Assembly (NCBI GenBank): GCA_000002975.1
Contig: AF165818.4
Span: 60,001 to 92,000 of the forward strand
Length of the DNA: 32,000 bases
DNA from: Guillardia theta nucleomorph
Lineage: Eukaryota > Protista > Cryptophyta
Reading direction: 5' to 3'
Every line of letters begins with the position of its first letter. The first letter of the stretch is position 1. This document shows positions 15,637-26,309 of this stretch, one piece after another. The position numbers were made by a program, and so were the translations under genes. The notes beneath the pieces were generated by a model that saw nothing but the letters and a program-made list of their open reading frames with translations, was not told the DNA's origin and ran no database searches.

Positions 15637-17871
15637 ATGGAATTTAAAAAATTTGAAACAAGAATTTATAATGAATTTAATAGAATAATTTGGAATTTTT
15701 TATCTCATGAAAATTTATTAGGTAAAACAATTTTTAAAAAGATTAAACGAACAAAATTCAAAAATAGTAATGATAACTTTAGTATTTCAATATATTTAAA
15801 TTTTGAAAATTTAATAAAGTTTAGCGACGAATTAGCTGATTATTGCATTTGCAATTATTTTGAAACAAAAAGTCTGGTTGAAGGTGTATTGTACAATTTA
15901 AATATTGATAAAAAAAAATTGAATTATAGGTATCGTAGTACACAAAGAAAGTTAATAATAAATATTCTAGTATTTTACAACTTACCATTTCACGTGAACT
16001 TAAAATACTTAAGTAAATTTAACACAAATTCTTGCTTATTAATCGAAGGGGTTGTTATTGATATCGAAGAAACTTACATATACAACTCAAATTTTTTTTT
16101 TGAGTGCAGAAACCCTTCTTGTAAAATTAAAAATGAATTCAAATATAGTATTATATTTAAAAACTATATAAATTGTAAATTTTGTAGATTTGCGAATACA
16201 AATATTCAATTCTTTAAAAATAATAACATAAATTCCTGTAAAAAAATTAAAATATTAAAAAATATAAGGAATAAAAAACGATCTGGCGAAATGATTAGTT
16301 TGATTGTTTTAGTTGAATCATTTGAAAATAATGTAATTAAAGTTGGGGATTATATACTGATGTCAGGTTATTTTATTGCAAATTCTGATTTTGAAGACCG
16401 AAATAAACAAATTTTTGAATCATTTGAAAGATATACAAAAAAAAATTTTTCATTATATTTAATATTTTATGCATTTCACTTTTTTAAGTTTGATTTTAAG
16501 AAAATTGAAAATTGTAAACATTTTAAAAGATTTTTGTTTAGACCAAATTTAAAATATTTTAATAATCTAAAATACATCATGAAAAACTTTAAAAAGAACA
16601 CTATTTTTAAGGTAAAAATTTTCAAACCATTTTTTACTGATGTAAATAATTATGACATTTTTATGATAGTTGTTGGCTGTATCCTAATCCAGAGTTTTGA
16701 GGAACAAAATAATAAATATAAAACTTCATTGGCAAAGATCAATCTATGTTTAATACAAGAACAATCAATAAAAAATAGTAAATCTTATAAATTTTTTTCA
16801 GATTTTATTGGTAAAGATCTATCCGGCTCAATCGCTAATTTTTTACGAATAAATGAGATGAGATATGAATTGAATTCAGAAAATAATAAAATAATCCTTG
16901 ATCAAATAAAAATCAACAAAAATATATTATTATTGAAAATGGATTTAAAAAGCTATCTTGAAAATATAAATTTTATTACTTTTTTAAACAAAAAGAAGAT
17001 AAATTTTATCAGAAATAATAAAATTTATAAAACCATTTTAAATGTCTTTATCATAATATTTATCGAACTGGTTCAGAATTCTGAAAATTTTTCATATTTC
17101 AACGGAATGTTAAATGAAGTTGAACAATTTGTTGATTTTATATTTGGAATTAAAACAAAGAACAATTTTGATTATTTTTCATATAGAAATTATTGTTTTT
17201 TAAATAATCAACTAATCTATAACCAATCGAATCGGAATTATTGTTCTTTTATTAAAAAAAATCATCTTATAATCTCTAATCTAACTTTTAGTTCTTGGAA
17301 AAAAAAATCAAAGTTATTTCTAATTAGATTCTACTTGTTTTATACTGATTTTTTCAAAGAAATAAATCTTGATATATTAAAAGGTATGCATTTTAATTTG
17401 CGTAAAGTATTTAGAATTTCAAAGGTAATTTCACAATTAATGATCGATTCTAAATTAATTGAATTTCACTTTAAGATATTTTTAAGAGCATTTTTACTTA
17501 CTTTCATAAAAAAAAACAATCTATTGAAGTCTGAAAACGGCCAAACCTTACTAAAAAAAATTTATGAAATTCTTTTTAATAAACGTTTATTCAATTTTTT
17601 AAAACATTATTCAGATAAAAATTCATTTGAGCTCGTGTTACAGATAAATAAAAACATCAAAGTTAAAAATGATATCGAGTATTTTTATCAAAATGAATTT
17701 AAAACAATATACTTCAATAAAGTTAAAATGAAAGGAAAATTTTTTGAACTTAAGTTCAGAACAAAAGAAACAAATCATCTAATGTTATTAAGATATATAA
17801 TTTTAATAATCCAACAAATTTATTTTAATTCGCACAGAACAGGATTCGAACCTGTGATGGATAACCAATAA
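15637..17871 (+). CDS. MCM-family protein, MCM5-like, highly divergent
   Basis: LNFENLIKFSDELADY (MCM5 EDLASFDEDLADY), LLIEGVVI, Zn finger ECRNPSC...CKFC, OB-fold IKVGDYILMSGYF. ATPase motifs degenerate. Confidence 0.65.
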   Translation: MEFKKFETRIYNEFNRIIWNFLSHENLLGKTIFKKIKRTKFKNSNDNFSISIYLNFENLIKFSDELADYCICNYFETKSLVEGVLYNLNIDKKKLNYRYRSTQRKLIINILVFYNLPFHVNLKYLSKFNTNSCLLIEGVVIDIEETYIYNSNFFFECRNPSCKIKNEFKYSIIFKNYINCKFCRFANTNIQFFKNNNINSCKKIKILKNIRNKKRSGEMISLIVLVESFENNVIKVGDYILMSGYFIANSDFEDRNKQIFESFERYTKKNFSLYLIFYAFHFFKFDFKKIENCKHFKRFLFRPNLKYFNNLKYIMKNFKKNTIFKVKIFKPFFTDVNNYDIFMIVVGCILIQSFEEQNNKYKTSLAKINLCLIQEQSIKNSKSYKFFSDFIGKDLSGSIANFLRINEMRYELNSENNKIILDQIKINKNILLLKMDLKSYLENINFITFLNKKKINFIRNNKIYKTILNVFIIIFIELVQNSENFSYFNGMLNEVEQFVDFIFGIKTKNNFDYFSYRNYCFLNNQLIYNQSNRNYCSFIKKNHLIISNLTFSSWKKKSKLFLIRFYLFYTDFFKEINLDILKGMHFNLRKVFRISKVISQLMIDSKLIEFHFKIFLRAFLLTFIKKNNLLKSENGQTLLKKIYEILFNKRLFNFLKHYSDKNSFELVLQINKNIKVKNDIEYFYQNEFKTIYFNKVKMKGKFFELKFRTKETNHLMLLRYIILIIQQIYFNSHRTGFEPVMDNQ

Positions 17872-17911
17872 GATTTCGAGTCTTACACCTTAACCACTCG
17901 GTCACCTGTGC
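17831..17911 (-). tRNA. trnS: tRNA-Ser (anticodon CGA)
   Basis: GCACAGGTGACCGAGTGGTTAAGGTGTAAGACT-CGA-AATCTTATTGGTTATCCATCACAGGTTCGAATCCTGTTCTGTGCG: full cloverleaf, long variable arm, G discriminator. Confidence 0.97.
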
Positions 17912-20398: not shown

Positions 20399-21320
20399 AT
20401 GGTAAAAATTGTCAGCAAACTTCTTGGATGTGATTATAAAAATTTTTTTAAAATAAATTCATTTCCTAATTTTTTGTTATACGGTTCGTCGGGGACAGGT
20501 AAAACTTTCACTGGTAAGTATTGATATTCATTTTTAAGAGATATGTAAATCACAATCTTTAGTTGAAAATTTTTTAAAAACAGCAAGAAACAAAAATATA
20601 ATTTCTAGAATTTTGAAATTAAATGCCTCTCAAAATAACAGTATCAGTATAATTAGAAATAAAATAAAAATATTTTGTAGATCTTCAATTCAATCAAAAA
20701 AACTTAAAGTTGTTGTTATTGATGAAGCTGATTTATTATCAGTTATATCGCAGGAGGCATTAAGAAGAATTATTGAAAAATTTAGTTTATCATCAAGATT
20801 TATCTTAATTTGTAATTATCCAACAAGAATAATTGAACCATTACAAAGTAGATTTATTTTATTTAAAATTGAAAATTTGAATTTCGAAAATATAATTAAA
20901 TTAATAAAATTTTACATTTTAAAAAAAAATATTTGTTATAAATTAGATTTTATTGAGAATGACATACATTCAACTAATGGAGACAAAAGAAAGTTAAAAA
21001 ATTGCTTGAAATTAGATTTAAATCGTATTTTTATGCATTTTAACTCTAATCGAAATTTTATCATCAATGATTTCAATTATAGATATTTATTGGAATTACA
21101 TGACAAAAATATCGATAAAGAAATTATCGATGATTATTTATTAAATTTTTTTATTAAACGTGAGTTATTGAAGAATATTTCTGAAAATATTTTAGAATAT
21201 GAAATAGATTTAGATTATAAAATAAAATTTCTTAGATATATAAGTTATAAAAGATTTAATAAACATTTTAAAAGTGCAGTGATAAAAAATTATTTTCAAC
21301 CGGGGACTCCTGGGAATTGA
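20399..21320 (+). CDS. rfc2: Replication factor C small subunit; two exons (20399-20513, 20563-21320), 290 aa
   Basis: Exon 1 gives FPNFLLYGSSGTGKT (Walker A). Splicing joins it in frame to LKLNAS, VVVIDEAD, QEALRRIIE, RFILICNY, IIEPLQSR. Confidence 0.93.
20514..20562 (+). other. 49-nt spliceosomal intron in rfc2 (phase 1)
   Basis: GTAAGTAT...CAATCTTTAG. Removal gives G|TT (Val) and restores the reading frame. Confidence 0.92.
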
Positions 21321-21373
21321 ACCCAGAATCTCTCGTACCCGAAACGAGAATCTTACCATTAGACCAAAGTCCC
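21302..21373 (-). tRNA. trnP: tRNA-Pro (anticodon CGG)
   Basis: GGGACTTTGGTCTAATGGTAAGATTCTCGTTT-CGG-GTACGAGAGATTCTGGGTTCAATTCCCAGGAGTCCCC: 72-nt cloverleaf. Confidence 0.97.
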
Positions 21374-22048
21374 ATGTTGTTATTAATAAACAATTTTAAA
21401 AAGAGTAAAAAATTATTTAAATTAAGTAAAGAACTTTTTCATGTTTTTCCTGGAAAAATTATTACTTCAATAAGATTAATTGAAAAAATTATTACTAAAT
21501 ATCCTAACCTGTGTAAATTTTTGAATATTCAAACAATTTTTTTTTTTTCTTGCAAAAAAATTTCTTTCTTTTTTTCAATTATTAAGCCAACAACAGGTTT
21601 AATAATTATTTTTGAGGTTTTTAATTTTTCTCTAGGAATTGAAATCCATCGTAATAATTTTTCAAAAAAAAAAAACAAAAATATTTTTTTGATATTCAGC
21701 AATTCGATTAACAACCAAGTAGAAGGAAGATTGTTACACAACGTTTTCAACGAAACTTTCCCTTTTTCTGAATACGATTTTTTGTACTGCCTGACCAAAT
21801 CAAAGTTGTTGTTTCTTAATTACTTTGAGTATGATTTACTTAAACATTCATATGAATTTCGCAGCTATATTGTTCAGGTGTCATATCTAAATATTTCAAG
21901 AAAAATAAGAAAAAATAACTCAAAAAACCTTCTCATAAAACATGAATCAAAATTGGATTTAACTCATAAAATTCAAGGAAAAAACTTTTTGATTAGAAGT
22001 TCCGAAAATGGACCCAAATTAAGTTTAAAATTAGTAATTGTTAAATAA
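21374..22048 (+). CDS. Brix-domain ribosome biogenesis protein, Ssf1/Peter Pan-like
   Basis: YEFRSYIVQV..LNISRKIRK (Ssf1 FRHYxI...GxSR) and terminal IRSSENGPKLSLKLV (Brix ExGPRxxLxL). ATG at 21374; the track's extension is tRNA antisense. Confidence 0.7.
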   Translation: MLLLINNFKKSKKLFKLSKELFHVFPGKIITSIRLIEKIITKYPNLCKFLNIQTIFFFSCKKISFFFSIIKPTTGLIIIFEVFNFSLGIEIHRNNFSKKKNKNIFLIFSNSINNQVEGRLLHNVFNETFPFSEYDFLYCLTKSKLLFLNYFEYDLLKHSYEFRSYIVQVSYLNISRKIRKNNSKNLLIKHESKLDLTHKIQGKNFLIRSSENGPKLSLKLVIVK

Positions 22049-22058
22049 GAACCTAATA

Positions 22059-23657
22059 TCATAGATCTACATCGAAATTTAATGATGGTTGTATCCTGAA
22101 AGTTTTCACTTTGGATTGTCCTTCTTGTTCAGCAATATCCTTATCGTTGACAATTGAAAAATTCAAAACATGAGGCCCATGAGAGTAAGAAGATACCAAT
22201 TGAAAATTACCAAAGCCTCTTAACCTAGCAGCTGCAGTTAATCCGAATCCTACAATCATTCCTGTTTGTTTGAACGAGGAATTTTTAACTGATCTATTAA
22301 TTTTATTCAATGATAAAAGTTTATAAACAGGAGAATCGTTGAATTTTTGAGCAAAATCTGTCAATACTTGTTCCAATTCAATTAAAGCATTATTGATGTT
22401 AAGATTCAGTTCAGGTATTCTAAGATCTTTTGAGTTAATTACAAACCAGTCTTTAACTTTTTGAATTAATTTAGTTTTTTCAATTTCAAAATCATTATCA
22501 CTTTTTGATACAATGTCAATTAAAACATCTTTAAATTTATCTAATGCCTGAGTTTGTAACATTAGTAATTGTTTTGTAAATAGTTTTATTATTTTTTTAT
22601 AAATAGATTCAGATAGGTTTTCTGATTTTTGAATCATATAGTTGTTACAAGAAGAATTATTTGTTTCAAAATTAAATTCTTTGTTGAGTTTTTCAATAAA
22701 TTCTTTAACATTATCACCAAAATTCTTTATGTAATTTCCGCTATTAACAATTTTAGACCAGTTGTTTAATATTTCATAGCCTGTAGAAAGTAATTTATAA
22801 TATGTTTTATCAATATTTATTTCATATACAATTTCCTTTGATAAATTTTCTAAAAATTTGTCATCAATAAAAAAAACATTTTGAGAAAAATTATACAGTT
22901 TAGTCAATCTTTCTTTATCTAATTCGAGTAATGTTGATTTATTATTTAGCCGATATTTATTTTTGTTTGACAAATTAATTTCTGTAATATTTTTATCATT
23001 AAATTTAATTTTATCTGAATTATCGTCAACGTTTGTAAAAATAAATTTAAAACAAAAACATTCTAGAAATAAATCTTTATCTTCGATAGAAAATTCAAAT
23101 AAACTAAATGATTGATTAAATAAATCTAACATAGAATCCATTAAAAAATTTTTTATATCATGTTCACTCATAGAAGATTCTTTGATATTTATTAACATAC
23201 CAATTTTAATATCATTCGATTTATTTTGATGTAATTCATAAATTTTAAATGTAAAAATATATTTAATAATGAAAAAAAAATCTGAATTAAAAACTTTGTT
23301 ACCGATTAATTCCGATCGAATTAAAATTGTGTCAGTGACACCTAATAAAAAATTTAAATTTTGAATAAATTCTATTTGAACATTATCAAAAATTAAACTC
23401 AAATCAATCAATGATTTACTAAAAATAGTAGAATATATACTATTTTTTACGCAAATTTGATTTATATTATCATTATAAAAGTTACCATCGGATTTTTTTG
23501 AGTTTTTATAAAAAGATTTATTCGGGCAAACAATTTCAGATAAGATTTGGCTTTTAGAATTTATAGTTTTTTCTTTTAAAAGAACATTAGTAAAACTTGA
23601 AAATTGTGTATTACCATCGTTGGCATTCATAATTGAATAATATTGAGATTTATCCAT
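22059..23657 (-). CDS. Conserved 532-aa protein (ORF532/PPP1-like); Sey1/RHD3-derived body with a distinct C-terminal domain
   Basis: Compositionally conserved C-terminus (GFGNFQLVSSYSHGPH...RIQPSLNFDVDL). The body is collinear by eye with the RHD3/Sey1 GTPase remnant and stalk. Confidence 0.6.
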   Translation of the reverse strand: MDKSQYYSIMNANDGNTQFSSFTNVLLKEKTINSKSQILSEIVCPNKSFYKNSKKSDGNFYNDNINQICVKNSIYSTIFSKSLIDLSLIFDNVQIEFIQNLNFLLGVTDTILIRSELIGNKVFNSDFFFIIKYIFTFKIYELHQNKSNDIKIGMLINIKESSMSEHDIKNFLMDSMLDLFNQSFSLFEFSIEDKDLFLECFCFKFIFTNVDDNSDKIKFNDKNITEINLSNKNKYRLNNKSTLLELDKERLTKLYNFSQNVFFIDDKFLENLSKEIVYEINIDKTYYKLLSTGYEILNNWSKIVNSGNYIKNFGDNVKEFIEKLNKEFNFETNNSSCNNYMIQKSENLSESIYKKIIKLFTKQLLMLQTQALDKFKDVLIDIVSKSDNDFEIEKTKLIQKVKDWFVINSKDLRIPELNLNINNALIELEQVLTDFAQKFNDSPVYKLLSLNKINRSVKNSSFKQTGMIVGFGLTAAARLRGFGNFQLVSSYSHGPHVLNFSIVNDKDIAEQEGQSKVKTFRIQPSLNFDVDL

Positions 23658-23692: not shown

Positions 23693-24694
23693 ATGTTGTT
23701 TGATTTTGGAATTAGAGAGAAAATTTATCTATCAATAGTGTCAAAAAAAAAAATTAAACTCGTTAAAAAGAAAAATATTGAAAAAATTAAAAATTTCGAG
23801 TTAAATCTATTATCTCTTTTAGATAATTTAACAGAAAATTCGGTAATTGAAATAAATGAATTTGGAAACATAATTATTATTGATCCAGGTTTGTTAAAAT
23901 GCGGTTACTATTCTCACATTTGTAATGAAGAAAAATCCATTAACTATTATTTAGAGTTTATTTGTTACATTTTACCTTTATTTGATTCTTATCTTGAACT
24001 GAATTTTATCGGTTCTTTAAATTCTAGCACAGATCTGTCTTTAGAAATAATGAGATACATGATTATGCCCCTAATTAGAAAATTTTTTTCAGATGAGATT
24101 AGACTAAAACTAATTAACAACAAGGATAAAATTTCAAGATTATTATTATTATTTTTTTTTAAAAACAAAAAAAGTTTTAGTTTTCATGATACTAGTCAAA
24201 TAGAATCAATTAGAATGATTCTTTCATATTCATCTTTTAGCTCTCAAAATTTTTGTAAAGATTTGTATAAGTCTCGTGTTAAATTTTTCGGAAAAAATTA
24301 TAATTTTAAAATTTTCGAAAATTATTTTTCAAAAAGTCAGTGTTTTTTTTATTCATTAACAATAATTGGACTAAGAAAAAACGGAGACGTTGCGTGTGAA
24401 TCTCAAGTAACAAACAAAAAATTGAATTTTAAAAATTTAGAAAAGTTTATTATTTTATTGTCTAATAAATTTAAAAAGCAATATTTATTGGAAAATAATA
24501 TTGACGACAATAACCAGATTTTATTTTTAATATTTTTATTAAATTCAAAAGACAATTTAATTAAAAAAATTTTGATAAATAATTTTACAATTAGGTCAGT
24601 TAGATTTATAAGAATTGCAAATCAAATTTTAAATATTAAATTTAGCATAAAAGTAATTTCGAAGAAAAATAAGATAATAATTAATTATAACTAA
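23693..24694 (+). CDS. rcl1: RNA 3'-terminal phosphate cyclase-like protein RCL1
   Basis: FELNLLSLLDNLTENSVIEINEFG.IIIIDPGLL..G..SHIC...SINYYLE matches the RCL1 N-terminus. Confidence 0.88.
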   Translation: MLFDFGIREKIYLSIVSKKKIKLVKKKNIEKIKNFELNLLSLLDNLTENSVIEINEFGNIIIIDPGLLKCGYYSHICNEEKSINYYLEFICYILPLFDSYLELNFIGSLNSSTDLSLEIMRYMIMPLIRKFFSDEIRLKLINNKDKISRLLLLFFFKNKKSFSFHDTSQIESIRMILSYSSFSSQNFCKDLYKSRVKFFGKNYNFKIFENYFSKSQCFFYSLTIIGLRKNGDVACESQVTNKKLNFKNLEKFIILLSNKFKKQYLLENNIDDNNQILFLIFLLNSKDNLIKKILINNFTIRSVRFIRIANQILNIKFSIKVISKKNKIIINYN

Positions 24695-26309
24695 AAAAAG
24701 TTACATCTTTTCCAAAGCTATTTCTTGTATTTTCTTCATCATTTAAAGTAGATCTAGTTTTCATATTATCCAGAGTTAAGACAAGATTTGATTCATTAAT
24801 AAATGGAAGAATTACAACTCCCTCCCATAAATTTTTTTTTCCATTCATGTCTATTTTATACTCTAGAGGATAATAATCAATAACAGGAGAATCTTTTTTA
24901 ACCATAAGTCTTGAGAACGATATGGGCAAGAGGTTTCTTGAATTAGGGGGTAACACTGCTAAGAGTTGAACAAGTGGTTCAAATGGCTTACCCTTTTTAA
25001 ATTTGATTTTAATTTTTTTCAAAGATTTTAGATCTGAAGCTAGTGGTGCATAGTATTCTGGATAAAACCAATTCCAAGACGGACATCCTTTATGATAATA
25101 GTATAAACACCAATGTAGCCCTTCGATGTAGGTTTGTATCAAATCATTTATTCTTTCTTTATTATTTGAAACGGAACAATTTAATTTTTTCACGTAATAC
25201 TCCATTTTATAATCATTTGAACATAGATTATTTTCAATATCATTACCTTTATTTAAGAAATACAACTCTTCTGATTCAACTGAGAGTTTCTCGAAAAATA
25301 ATTCTGCTCTTCCAACATGAATTTTTGACTTATTTGTTAAATAACCATGTATATGTTTTTGAATTTCTTTGTATGATCTAACTAAAAGATTTAGACCACC
25401 GTATCCAATGTCTAAATGAGGAATGCCTGGAAGAAAATCATTTCCAATTAACATGCACATAAATACAAAATCATCAACAATTCTTTCCATATTATAATCT
25501 TGGTCCAGGAATTCCCTTGGTCTAAATTCTAAATATAACATTTCTCTCAACAAAGATATTTCAAGCAAATGGAAATCGTCAGAAGGTGATTTTTCAAACT
25601 CATAATTATATCCTTCTTTTACATTTGAAGTTCCTTTCCATGCTAATTTTTCTCTTAAAAGTGTAAAATTTTTTTCATGAGATACTAATCCTAACATAAT
25701 TAAGTCTGCATCTAAACCATAAAGACAATGTGATAATATCAAATCAGGATTATTTTTTAAATTTTTTAACTTTCGAATAAAATTCATTATTTTATGTTCT
25801 CCTTCTCCGGGAACTTCAGCCCCACTAAAAATGATATCACATCCAGTTTGCCATTCGATGTCAGTTTTAATTTTTTTTTCAAGCCAAATTTTAAAAGCAT
25901 ATGAAAGTTCTGCCATGAAAGATGTACCAGGTGTAATACAGTTAGAATCTAAAGTTAAATTTAATCTATTTCTATGATCAAAGTCACTTTTCTTTTCATT
26001 ATCTTTTATAGCTCTGAATCTTCGTGAACGTTGCTGATTCATTTTTGCTCTGGGTGCAACACCATCTATTGCCAAATATAATAATTTTTTAGGGTGAATT
26101 ATAGTGTAGAGATACTCAGTATAGTCAAAAATTTTTTGAAATAAGATATCTTTATTAAAATTTTGTTCGGACGCTATTTTTTGAAAACAAGTGTGAATTA
26201 TACCATTCATATCAAGGTAAAAACAATCGAATTCACTTTTTTCAAATATTTTTTGATTTATAAGAGGATAACGTTCTGATAGCCATCTAAAAAATTTTGG
26301 TACACCCAT
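24681..26309 (-). CDS. xrn1: 5'-3' exoribonuclease, XRN family, catalytic core only (XRN1-like N-terminus)
   Basis: MGVPKFFRWLSERYP, YLDMNGIIH, AIDGVAPRAKMNQQRSRRF, DSNCITPGT, VPGEGEHKI, YGLDADLIMLGL, GNDFLP, SWNWFYP..YAP, QLLAVLP. Confidence 0.93.
   Translation of the reverse strand: MGVPKFFRWLSERYPLINQKIFEKSEFDCFYLDMNGIIHTCFQKIASEQNFNKDILFQKIFDYTEYLYTIIHPKKLLYLAIDGVAPRAKMNQQRSRRFRAIKDNEKKSDFDHRNRLNLTLDSNCITPGTSFMAELSYAFKIWLEKKIKTDIEWQTGCDIIFSGAEVPGEGEHKIMNFIRKLKNLKNNPDLILSHCLYGLDADLIMLGLVSHEKNFTLLREKLAWKGTSNVKEGYNYEFEKSPSDDFHLLEISLLREMLYLEFRPREFLDQDYNMERIVDDFVFMCMLIGNDFLPGIPHLDIGYGGLNLLVRSYKEIQKHIHGYLTNKSKIHVGRAELFFEKLSVESEELYFLNKGNDIENNLCSNDYKMEYYVKKLNCSVSNNKERINDLIQTYIEGLHWCLYYYHKGCPSWNWFYPEYYAPLASDLKSLKKIKIKFKKGKPFEPLVQLLAVLPPNSRNLLPISFSRLMVKKDSPVIDYYPLEYKIDMNGKKNLWEGVVILPFINESNLVLTLDNMKTRSTLNDEENTRNSFGKDVTFFSYN

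What the first reader, a model, noticed from the sequence alone, without database searches (positions are those of the whole stretch)
22059..23657. ORF532 looks like a GTPase-dead Sey1/RHD3 ER fusogen with a new C-terminal domain
By-eye collinear matches to RHD3: FLLGVTDTILIR~FALAVSDIVLIN, IIKYIF~LLKTVF, DIKNFLMDSMLDLF~NLEPVLREDIQKIW, IVNSGNYIKNFGDNV...EFNFET~AVQSGPVSGFGRKL...EYDTEA, KSENL...LFTKQLLMLQTQALDKFK~KRQQL...TFQDVLGHLRAGALENFK, LRIPELNLN~AVIEQAKWD. The P-loop (GxQSSGKS) and transmembrane hairpin are missing. In their place is a Gly-rich, beta-like ~70-aa tail far less AT-biased than the rest. From recollection, nucleomorph ORF532 homologues (diatom sORF532, Toxoplasma PPP1) are periplastid proteins needed for complex-plastid biogenesis, with unknown mechanism. 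Inference: the red-algal atlastin-like fusogen was repurposed as a periplastid membrane scaffold or import factor. This is the best candidate for an undescribed system here.
Basis: partly seen in the sequence, partly recalled or inferred. Interest (0 to 1): 0.85.

Follow-up and report, generated by a model that had tools for sequence, protein, structure and literature searches.

The report
Nucleomorph PTF3: GTPase-dead Sey1-like import factor
ORF532 really is a Sey1/RHD3-derived protein that has lost its GTP-binding motifs and membrane anchor, but it belongs to the published PTF/PPP1 family of plastid protein-import factors, so it is a sound annotation and not a new system.

Summary
The ORF at 22059-23657(-) is 532 aa. 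It has no P-loop and no transmembrane hairpin. It ends in a Gly-rich beta tail whose DNA is 35% GC, against 18-22% upstream.

Sey1/RHD3 homology is firm:
- hhalign against canonical RHD3/Sey1 gives 99% probability, E 7e-18.
- The AlphaFold model (pLDDT 83) matches Sey1p best (Foldseek 8.6e-10; VIA Z 17.5).
- Red-algal orthologues carry Pfam RHD3_GTPase and Sey1_3HB.

It is not undescribed. This ORF (Gt1_532a) was called a Sey1 homologue by Zauner 2019. Its diatom homologue sORF532a localises to the periplastid compartment (Moog 2011). Baek 2022 showed that the red-algal relatives PTF1-3 bind transit peptides.

My tree and a pairwise BLAST (2e-49, running to the C terminus) make ORF532 the orthologue of Cyanidioschyzon PTF3. 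Toxoplasma PPP1 is probably orthologous to the paralogue ORF534/PTF1.

The tail is not new. It is shared by the whole PTF3 clade, red algae included, and is homologous to the PTF1 tail.

What this work adds:
- All G1-G4 motifs are lost, yet the G-domain fold is still predicted with confidence.
- The same decay occurred independently in ORF534.
- The tail is modelled with high confidence as a four-stranded amphipathic sheet with a conserved polar face.

The scan also flagged ORF534 and ORF261 elsewhere in this genome.

The parts
22059..23657 (-). ORF532 (Gt1_532a) coding sequence including the stop codon; nucleomorph-encoded PTF3-type Sey1/RHD3-like protein
   Evidence: ORF list. The 100% self-hit lies on a 196,216-nt contig. 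The window is G000:C1:60001-92000 of a 551,264-bp, 3-contig genome.
22920..23657 (-). aa 1-246: degenerate large-GTPase (GB1/RHD3-type) domain. The fold is predicted to be retained, but G1 (P-loop), G2, G3 (DxxG) and G4 (RD) are all lost. An internal loop around aa 215-240 is disordered.
   Evidence: Alignment A4 with red-algal and canonical proteins. In the AF2 model, the strands and helices of the G domain mostly have pLDDT 73-94. VIA aligns model residues 1-264 to atlastin and GBP G domains with rmsd 3.7-4.0 A over 217-230 residues, Z 12-13.
22281..22919 (-). aa 247-459: helical stalk, equivalent to the first part of the Sey1 three-helix-bundle stalk. Contains the conserved FTKQLLxLQTQALDKFK helix.
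   Evidence: hhalign to canonical RHD3/Sey1 runs up to residue 449. VIA aligns model 5-465 to Sey1p 27-501. The orthologues' Pfam Sey1_3HB hits cover only profile positions 2-~130 of 419. pLDDT is 86-98, apart from one block of 78 at 331-340.
22062..22280 (-). aa 460-532: conserved C-terminal beta module. Four amphipathic strands at 466-478, 486-493, 496-503 and 520-531. Invariant R478, G481, N504, Q523 and P524. It always ends at the free C terminus (...RxQPxLNFDxDL).
   Evidence: Cryptophyte alignment. 67-sequence family alignment and per-column hydropathy. AF2. GC and Gly enrichment. BLASTP to the C. merolae orthologue runs to the last residue.

Best explanation
[quoted passage not shown] PTFs descend from the dynamin-like ER fusogen Sey1/RHD3. 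They lost the transmembrane hairpin and most of the stalk before secondary endosymbiosis, and gained a conserved C-terminal beta module.

The protein is made on periplastid ribosomes and stays in the periplastid compartment, the remnant red-algal cytosol. There it most likely binds the transit peptides of plastid preproteins and hands them to the translocon of the third (outer-envelope) membrane.

In the nucleomorph copy every nucleotide-binding motif has decayed while the G-domain fold is still predicted. It therefore works as a GTP-independent adaptor, a pseudo-GTPase. The conserved polar face of the C-terminal sheet and the stalk are the candidate binding surfaces.

Status of each step:
- **Shown here:** homology, domain anatomy, motif loss, orthology.
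- **Taken from papers:** periplastid location (diatom homologue) and transit-peptide binding (C. merolae PTF3).
- **Inferred:** that the G. theta protein does the same, and which surface does it.
For: **Homology to Sey1/RHD3**
- The A1 profile hits red-algal proteins at 1e-73 to 1e-85 and canonical RHD3 (P0111) at 1.6e-13.
- Four red-algal hits were scanned against Pfam. The Galdieria, C. merolae and Pyropia proteins have RHD3_GTPase at 1e-46 to 1e-50 plus Sey1_3HB. The scanned hits and Porphyridium all have intact P-loops.
- hhalign gives 99.0%, E 7e-18.
- Foldseek's top hits are Sey1p 5ca8/5ca9 at 8.6e-10 and 4.8e-9. VIA gives Z 17.5 and 16.2.

**Orthology to PTF3**
- ORF532 sits in a clade (SH-aLRT 96) with the red-algal proteins, including C. 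merolae XP_005538016. This clade is separate from the ORF534 and ORF261 clades.
- BLASTP to the C. merolae protein gives 2e-49, end to end through the tail.
- That protein lies on a 1,232,258-bp chromosome. C. merolae gene names carry a chromosome letter, and I recall that its chromosomes are numbered by increasing size. On that basis it cannot be chr 9 (PTF1, CMI311C) or chr 4 (PTF2, CMD101C), which leaves PTF3, CMQ054C (PMC9407449).

**Function, from papers**
- PTF1 and PTF3 bind preproteins through the transit peptide and are cytosolic (PMC9407449).
- Diatom sORF532a-GFP is periplastid (PMC3101018).
- PPP1 knock-down blocks apicoplast import (PMC3228799).

**Motif loss:**

**Purifying selection on the tail:** near-invariance among cryptophytes and GC 35% in a ~20% GC genome.

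**Transcription:** antisense-orientation RNA-seq reads and metatranscriptome contigs cover the ORF.
Against: - No experiment exists on the G. theta protein itself.
- With no GTP cycle, a targeting factor has no obvious release step.
- Zauner 2019 favoured a plastid-division role for the nucleomorph Sey1-like proteins, on the basis of CMD101C.
- The PTF3 = XP_005538016 equation rests on chromosome size and elimination, not on a locus tag that I could read.
- RNA coverage is low and 3'-biased.
- The predicted ORF532/ORF534 complex gave no verdict.
Confidence: 0.75

Rival explanations
1. It acts in division of the complex plastid, as part of or a recruiter for the plastid-dividing machinery at the outer envelope, and not in protein import.
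For: Zauner 2019 (PMC6559170) argues this for the nucleomorph Sey1-like proteins. The reason is that CMD101C, the C. merolae homologue of ORF261, was found in a proteome of plastid-dividing machineries. Dynamin-superfamily proteins commonly act in organelle division.
Against: The proteome hit concerns the ORF261/PTF2 paralogue, not the PTF3 type. PTF3 was shown to bind transit peptides (PMC9407449). ORF532 has no GTPase activity to drive constriction and no membrane anchor.
Confidence: 0.1
2. It is still a Sey1-like membrane tether or shaper in the periplastid compartment. It would hold or shape membranes or vesicles between the periplastid membrane and the outer envelope, with the beta tail as a peripheral membrane anchor.
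For: It descends from an ER fusogen. The tail strands are amphipathic with a strictly alternating last strand. Zauner 2019 discusses vesicle-like structures in the periplastid compartment.
Against: Fusion by Sey1 or atlastin needs GTP-driven G-domain dimerisation and a TM hairpin, and both are lost. The polar face of the tail is the conserved one (R478, N504, D505, R521, Q523, D529), which points to a binding surface and not a lipid-embedded one. C. merolae PTF1 and PTF3 are mainly cytosolic (PMC9407449).
Confidence: 0.08
3. It is a decaying relic with no function. The GTPase decay would be the first stage of gene loss in a shrinking nucleomorph genome.
For: All G motifs are lost. The N-terminal ~85 residues are poorly conserved among cryptophytes. 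RNA coverage is low.
Against: The frame is intact at 532 aa and is retained in all sampled cryptophyte nucleomorph lineages. The tail and stalk are nearly invariant and escape the AT drift. The G-domain fold is still predicted with confidence.
Confidence: 0.02

Closest known systems
PTF3 (CMQ054C) of Cyanidioschyzon merolae, and the PTF1-3 family (Baek et al. 2022, PNAS, PMC9407449)
   Same: Both have a Sey1/RHD3-like N-terminal 400-500 residues, no TM segments, and a conserved C-terminal region with invariant glutamines. The tail motif ...RP.G.GNFQL...GPH..N.S..ND.D.AEQEG....FR.QP...FD.DL is identical in register up to the last residue (BLASTP 2e-49). Both fall in the same clade.
   Different: The C. 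merolae protein keeps a canonical P-loop (GPRGSGKS) and the G3 and G4 motifs; ORF532 has lost all of them. ORF532 is encoded in a nucleomorph and works in the periplastid compartment, not a primary cytosol. It is about 100 aa shorter.
Sey1p / RHD3 (dynamin-like ER fusogen; PDB 5CA8, 5CA9)
   Same: The G-domain fold and the first part of the helical stalk match (VIA Z 17.5 over 410 residues; hhalign 99%).
   Different: ORF532 has no G1-G4 motifs. Its stalk is truncated, matching about the first 130 of 419 Sey1_3HB profile positions. It has no TM hairpin and no C-terminal amphipathic helix; a beta module stands in their place.
PPP1 of Toxoplasma gondii (Sheiner et al. 2011, PMC3228799) and G. 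theta ORF534 (PTF1 type)
   Same: They belong to the same superfamily, and the stalk plus the first three tail strands are homologous (hhalign 99%, E 3e-18, reaching into the tail). Both are periplastid and linked to import. ORF534 has lost its P-loop in the same way.
   Different: They are probably paralogues. PPP1's C. merolae match is on chromosome 9 (Table S5), which is PTF1. ORF534 and PTF1-type proteins carry the conserved Q-rich patch YLQMQQAQMQAIQQQQ and end ...GPANLGLSLNLNL. ORF532 lacks both features.
Diatom sORF532a (Moog et al. 2011, PMC3101018)
   Same: It was named as the Phaeodactylum homologue of this very ORF, and its GFP fusion is periplastid. Diatom members sit in the ASH (alveolates, stramenopiles, haptophytes) sub-clade of the PTF3 clade and share the tail.
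   Different: It is nucleus-encoded with a bipartite targeting signal. Its tail variant is ...NDADAPE....GG.RPP..R.QPKLN.D.EL.

Membership tests
Sey1/RHD3 (canonical ER fusogen) | GB1/RHD3-type large G-domain fold | tested here: met
   VIA Z 17.5 and 16.2 to Sey1p. The G domain alone aligns to atlastin and GBP with rmsd 3.7-4.0 A over 217-230 residues. Foldseek 8.6e-10.
Sey1/RHD3 (canonical ER fusogen) | Functional nucleotide-binding motifs G1 (GxxxxGKS), G2 (T), G3 (DxxG), G4 (RD) | tested here: not met
   In alignment A4, the G1 position reads VCPNKSFY, G3 reads LIDLSL, and G4 reads LINIKE. There is no P-loop regex match. Pfam RHD3_GTPase does not hit the ORF or anything in the nucleomorph genome.
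Sey1/RHD3 (canonical ER fusogen) | Full-length stalk of three-helix bundles (Pfam Sey1_3HB, 419 positions) | tested here: not met
   hhalign stops at RHD3 residue ~472. The orthologues match only Sey1_3HB positions 2-~130.
Sey1/RHD3 (canonical ER fusogen) | [quoted passage not shown] | tested here: not met
   The highest KD19 mean is 1.25, against 2.3-2.6 with paired windows in canonical members.
PTF/PPP1 family (Baek 2022) | N-terminal 400-500 residues similar to Sey1/RHD3, without TM segments | tested here: met
PTF/PPP1 family (Baek 2022) | Conserved C-terminal ~200 residues with conserved glutamines, shared with PPP1/PTFs | tested here: met
   Q523 is invariant and Q363 and Q486 are nearly invariant across 67 sequences. 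The tail aligns to the C. merolae orthologue up to the last residue and to the PTF1 type by hhalign.
PTF/PPP1 family (Baek 2022) | [quoted passage not shown] | tested here: not met
   It is lost in ORF532 and in all cryptophyte nucleomorph orthologues. The family as published tolerates this loss.
PTF/PPP1 family (Baek 2022) | Orthology to PTF3 specifically (not PTF1 or PTF2) | tested here: met
   The clade has SH-aLRT 96 and includes C. merolae XP_005538016. ORF534 and ORF261 group elsewhere. The link XP_005538016 = CMQ054C is inferred from the size of its chromosome and the gene names in PMC9407449.
PTF/PPP1 family (Baek 2022) | Binds transit peptides of plastid preproteins; needed for import | not testable with these tools
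   Biochemistry exists only for C. merolae PTF1 and PTF3 (PMC9407449), and genetics only for T. gondii PPP1 (PMC3228799).

The most novel reading that the evidence does not exclude
The invariant C-terminal four-stranded amphipathic module always ends at the free C terminus with a strictly alternating last strand (F-R-I-Q-P-x-L-N-F-D-V-D-L). It could be a docking element that pairs by beta-augmentation with the Omp85/Toc75-type channel or its POTRA domains in the outer-envelope membrane, mimicking a beta-signal. PTFs would then be the red-lineage functional replacement for the Toc34/159 receptors. The nucleomorph copies, in which ORF532 and ORF534 independently lost GTP binding, would show that this receptor function needs no GTP cycle.
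Probability: 0.15. Interest if true: 0.6.

Novelty: already known. Interest (0 to 1): 0.25.

Why it matters
Red algae and all red-derived complex plastids (cryptophytes, diatoms, haptophytes, apicomplexans) lack clear Toc34/159 receptors. The PTF/PPP1 family is the current candidate for that missing targeting step.

The nucleomorph copy adds a natural experiment. The stalk and the beta tail are under strong constraint, while every GTP-binding motif has gone. This says which parts of a PTF are indispensable. The main value for the scan is a correct annotation (PTF3-type pseudo-GTPase) and the removal of an "undescribed system" flag.

Tried and rejected
**Searches that found nothing useful**
- Direct Pfam, NCBIfam and PDB-sequence searches with the ORF, and a PDB search with the A1 profile, gave nothing significant. 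The weak RhoGEF, INCENP and KH hits are noise.
- A PF05879 scan of the whole nucleomorph genome found nothing. Its controls also stayed silent, so this says little.
- A phmmer-type search of the ORF against its own genome found only itself. The paralogues appeared only with the 67-sequence profile.
- A word-indexed search with the apicomplexan member P0075, meant to reach a named Toxoplasma protein, found only itself. The search with the PTF1-type alignment found red algae, ochrophytes and canonical Sey1/RHD3 proteins, but no apicomplexan.
- Paper searches for 'orf532', '287270' and 'PPP1 + apicoplast + 532a' were unproductive.
- No supplements are held for Zauner 2019, Baek 2022 or the 2025 SELMA paper.
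- The ESM Atlas look-up of the tail gave no usable feature hit, and only TM<0.5 matches to the Atlas's own poor model.

**Weak or inconclusive runs**
- The first AlphaFold run, with 10 sequences, gave a poor tail (pLDDT <50). It was superseded by the 67-sequence run.
- Complex prediction of ORF532 (247-532) with ORF534 (275-534) returned no verdict. The score was 0.00 and the alignments were not used. This is not evidence either way.

**Ideas considered and dropped**
- I considered a transmembrane beta-barrel anchor formed by oligomerisation of the tail. I dropped it as the main reading because the polar face, not the hydrophobic one, carries the invariant residues, and because C. merolae PTFs are mainly soluble.

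**Limits and operator notes**
I therefore make no claim that its fold is new.
Full report
**Source and the ORF**

The window is G000:C1:60001-92000 of a 551,264-bp genome in three contigs. It is about 20% GC. The ORF's exact match lies on a 196,216-nt contig, and its nearest relatives are nucleomorph proteins of Cryptomonas and Chroomonas. That identification is an inference; no record name was shown.

The ORF at 22059-23657 (-) is 532 aa with an ATG start. Its neighbours are unrelated housekeeping genes: an RFC-like AAA protein, tRNA-Pro, an Rcl1-like cyclase, an XRN exonuclease and a GPN-loop GTPase. Gene context says nothing about function.

**Checking the observation**

- No P-loop.
- No hydrophobic segment of TM strength: the highest KD19 mean is 1.25, against paired windows of 2.3-2.6 in canonical Sey1/RHD3.
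- A C-terminal tail of about 73 aa with 9.6% Gly, against 1.7% upstream.
- Tail DNA at 35% GC, against 18-22% for the rest.

The by-eye blocks are real. A profile-profile comparison of the cryptophyte family (A1) with twelve canonical RHD3/Sey1 proteins (A6) gives 99.0% probability and E 7e-18 over 342 columns. It aligns residues 99-449 with 121-472. It begins at NFLLGVTDTILIR and passes through the LFTKQLLMLQTQALDKFK helix.

**Homology**

The ORF alone hits nothing in Pfam, NCBIfam or PDB sequences. A profile of ten cryptophyte orthologues, searched exhaustively, finds 298 proteins.

The best non-cryptophyte hits are red-algal proteins from Galdieria, Cyanidioschyzon merolae (XP_005538016), Pyropia and Porphyridium ('SEY1-like'), at 1e-73 to 1e-85. 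The Galdieria, C. merolae and Pyropia proteins were scanned against Pfam. Each carries RHD3_GTPase (1e-46 to 1e-50) and Sey1_3HB. All four have intact P-loops. A canonical RHD3/Sey1 protein, with both Pfam domains and two TM segments, is hit directly at 1.6e-13.

With a 67-sequence alignment, AlphaFold2 gives mean pLDDT 83.4. Foldseek ranks Sey1p 5CA8 and 5CA9 first, at 8.6e-10 and 4.8e-9. VIA-align gives Z 17.5 and 16.2, with model residues 5-465 on Sey1p 27-501. The G domain alone superposes on atlastin and GBP G domains at 3.7-4.0 A.

**Anatomy**

*Residues 1-246: a large-GTPase fold without its chemistry.* Aligned with red-algal orthologues and canonical proteins:
- G1 (G.RGSGKS or G.QSSGKS) reads VCPNKSFY.
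- The G2 threonine is gone.
- G3 (D.EG) reads DLSL.
- G4 (RD or HD) reads NIK.

Other cryptophyte lineages retain scraps, such as the first P-loop glycine in Cryptomonas and an HD in Chroomonas. None keeps a full set.

*Residues 247-459: the helical stalk.* It matches only the first part of the Sey1 stalk.

*Residues 460-532: four strands.* These are 466-478, 486-493, 496-503 and 520-531, with block-mean pLDDT of 80-96 over 470-529. Across 67 family members the hydrophobic positions alternate strictly. The invariant or near-invariant residues lie on the polar side or in turns: R478, G481, G483, N484, Q486, N504, D505, R521, Q523, P524 and D529. Every full-length member ends exactly at this motif.

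**Family and orthology**

The nucleomorph genome holds two paralogues, found only with the broad profile:
- ORF534 (G000:C1:170034-171638).
- ORF261, on contig 3.

A tree rooted on canonical Sey1/RHD3 gives three separate clades. The ORF532 clade has SH-aLRT 96 and contains:
- the red-algal proteins above;
- a 100%-supported cryptophyte nucleomorph group;
- a group from alveolates, stramenopiles and possibly haptophytes (the ASH group): diatoms, brown algae, a raphidophyte, unnamed rows that may include haptophytes, Vitrella, and the apicomplexans Cardiosporidium and Theileria.

The literature names these proteins. Baek et al. 2022 (PMC9407449) found that three C. merolae Sey1/RHD3-like GTP-binding proteins associate transiently with importing preproteins: PTF1 (CMI311C), PTF2 (CMD101C) and PTF3 (CMQ054C). 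These proteins have no TM segments and share a conserved glutamine-containing C-terminal region with PPP1. PTF1 and PTF3 are mainly cytosolic, and GST fusions of both pull down preproteins only when the transit peptide is present.

The C. merolae member of the ORF532 clade lies on a 1,232,258-bp chromosome. C. merolae gene names carry the chromosome letter, and I recall that its chromosomes are numbered by increasing size. On that basis the chromosome cannot be 9 or 4, so the protein is PTF3. This is an inference by elimination. The pairwise BLASTP is 2e-49 and runs to the last residue.

Zauner et al. 2019 equate ORF261 with CMD101C. ORF534 then corresponds to PTF1. That fits its conserved Q-rich patch and a 628-aa red-algal member of about 67 kDa.

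**Is PPP1 the orthologue?**

Probably not; I put it at about 70% that PPP1 is a paralogue. Three points support this:
- Sheiner's Table S5 gives C. merolae chromosome 9 as PPP1's match. That is PTF1.
- Sheiner describes a conserved Q-rich patch in the C-terminal block, a feature of the PTF1/ORF534 type.
- Ochrophyte PTF1-type proteins of about 310 aa, with a signal peptide and no G domain, fit Baek's remark that diatom PPP1 lacks the GTP-binding domain.

Against this, the PTF3 clade also has apicomplexan and chromerid members. I could not obtain the Toxoplasma sequence to place it. Either way, PPP1 and ORF532 are homologous through the stalk and into the tail.

**Mechanism**

By orthology, ORF532 most likely binds transit peptides in the periplastid compartment and delivers preproteins to the third membrane. 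The periplastid compartment is the former red-algal cytosol and still translates nucleomorph mRNAs for plastid proteins. A cytosolic red-algal targeting factor therefore keeps its original job there.

The diatom homologue sORF532a is periplastid (PMC3101018). Depletion of PPP1 blocks apicoplast import (PMC3228799).

The G. theta copy cannot cycle GTP. The constrained parts are the stalk helix FTKQLLxLQTQALDKFK and the tail, which are the candidate binding surfaces. Whether the tail binds the transit peptide, the envelope or a partner PTF is not known. A predicted ORF532/ORF534 complex gave no verdict.

**What this work adds**

1. The nucleomorph PTF3 is a pseudo-GTPase with all four motifs lost, but its G-domain fold is still predicted with confidence.
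2. The same loss occurred independently in ORF534, whose red-algal counterpart (Bangiopsis) keeps GPQGSGKS. Within the ASH lineages it occurred patchily. Brown algae and a raphidophyte keep a Pfam-detectable RHD3_GTPase with a P-loop. Diatoms, Vitrella and the apicomplexans do not.
3. The tail is a discrete four-stranded module with a conserved polar face. It is homologous between the PTF1 and PTF3 types.
4. A glaucophyte (Cyanophora) has a related TM-less Sey1-like protein with an aromatic alternating tail. This agrees with Baek's suggestion that the system may extend beyond red algae.

**Expression**

In a stranded RNA-seq run of the same species label, reads in the orientation expected for the minus-strand gene cover the 3' third at depth 3-18 and thin out towards the 5' end. 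About 6% of the run was read. Metatranscriptome contigs cover 22317-23329 with few differences. This is weak but positive evidence of transcription.

**Verdict**

The Sey1/RHD3 ancestry, the dead GTPase and the missing TM hairpin are all correct. The claims of novelty do not hold:
- This ORF was listed as a Sey1 homologue in 2019.
- Its diatom homologue was localised in 2011.
- The family was given a biochemical function in 2022.
- The relation of the nucleomorph copies to specific red-algal paralogues was stated in 2025 (PMC12412216).
- The tail is ancestral to the family, not a new domain.

The scan's first stage also flagged ORF534 and ORF261 of this genome as Sey1/RHD3-derived.

Noticed in passing
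L003:1300-2904 (G000:C1:170034-171638, +): ORF534, the PTF1-type paralogue, has lost its P-loop in parallel. The red alga Bangiopsis has GPQGSGKSTLLN where ORF534 reads NPIKFNYNLIFEN. ORF534 keeps a conserved Q-rich patch (YLQMQQAQMQAIQQQQ) and a nearly invariant tail ...AYRPPDSN..GYQQGRT..PDEQ..LGPNGF..GPANLG.SLNLNL. It is probably the true G. theta orthologue of Toxoplasma PPP1.
   Followed up: partly
L004:1492-2277 (G000 contig 3, +): ORF261 is a stand-alone stalk (PTF2 type) with no G domain and no PTF1/PTF3-type tail. It groups with 416-552-aa proteins (P0141, P0144, P0154).
   Followed up: partly
window 21302-21373 (-): tRNA-Pro (CGG) lies between the RFC-like ORF (20613-21320) and the ORF at 21317-22048. 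Both mechanical ORFs run into it, so their listed ends (…QPGTPGN / MNPESLVPETRILPLDQSP…) are partly translations of the tRNA gene. A second tRNA, Ser (CGA), is at 17831-17911 (-).
   Followed up: no
window 23693-24694 (+) and 24681-26309 (-): An Rcl1/RNA 3'-phosphate-cyclase-like ORF and an XRN-type 5'-3' exonuclease converge and overlap by 14 nt at their 3' ends. This illustrates how tightly this genome is packed.
   Followed up: no
proteins P0268-P0273: These are short (302-325 aa) PTF1-type proteins with an N-terminal signal peptide, a Sey1_3HB match in P0268 (the one scanned) and the PTF1 tail, but no G domain. They look like the ochrophyte or diatom form described as 'PPP1 without GTP-binding domain'.
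   Followed up: partly
proteins P0118, P0150 (Cyanophora paradoxa and a relative): A glaucophyte has a TM-less Sey1-like protein with an intact P-loop and a tail of alternating aromatics (…MTNFNFSFGFNFQFGPGGY). This suggests the PTF-like branch is older than red algae.
   Followed up: no
proteins P0043, P0039 versus P0050, P0056, P0075, P0142, P0201: Within the ASH part of the PTF3 clade, brown algae and a raphidophyte keep a Pfam-detectable RHD3_GTPase with a P-loop. Diatoms, Vitrella and apicomplexans do not. GTPase loss has therefore happened several times.
   Followed up: partly
window 22046-22227: RNA-seq depth in the orientation of the upstream plus-strand gene (43-64) continues about 170 nt past its stop into the 3' end of ORF532 on the other strand. 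This suggests convergent, overlapping transcripts.
   Followed up: no
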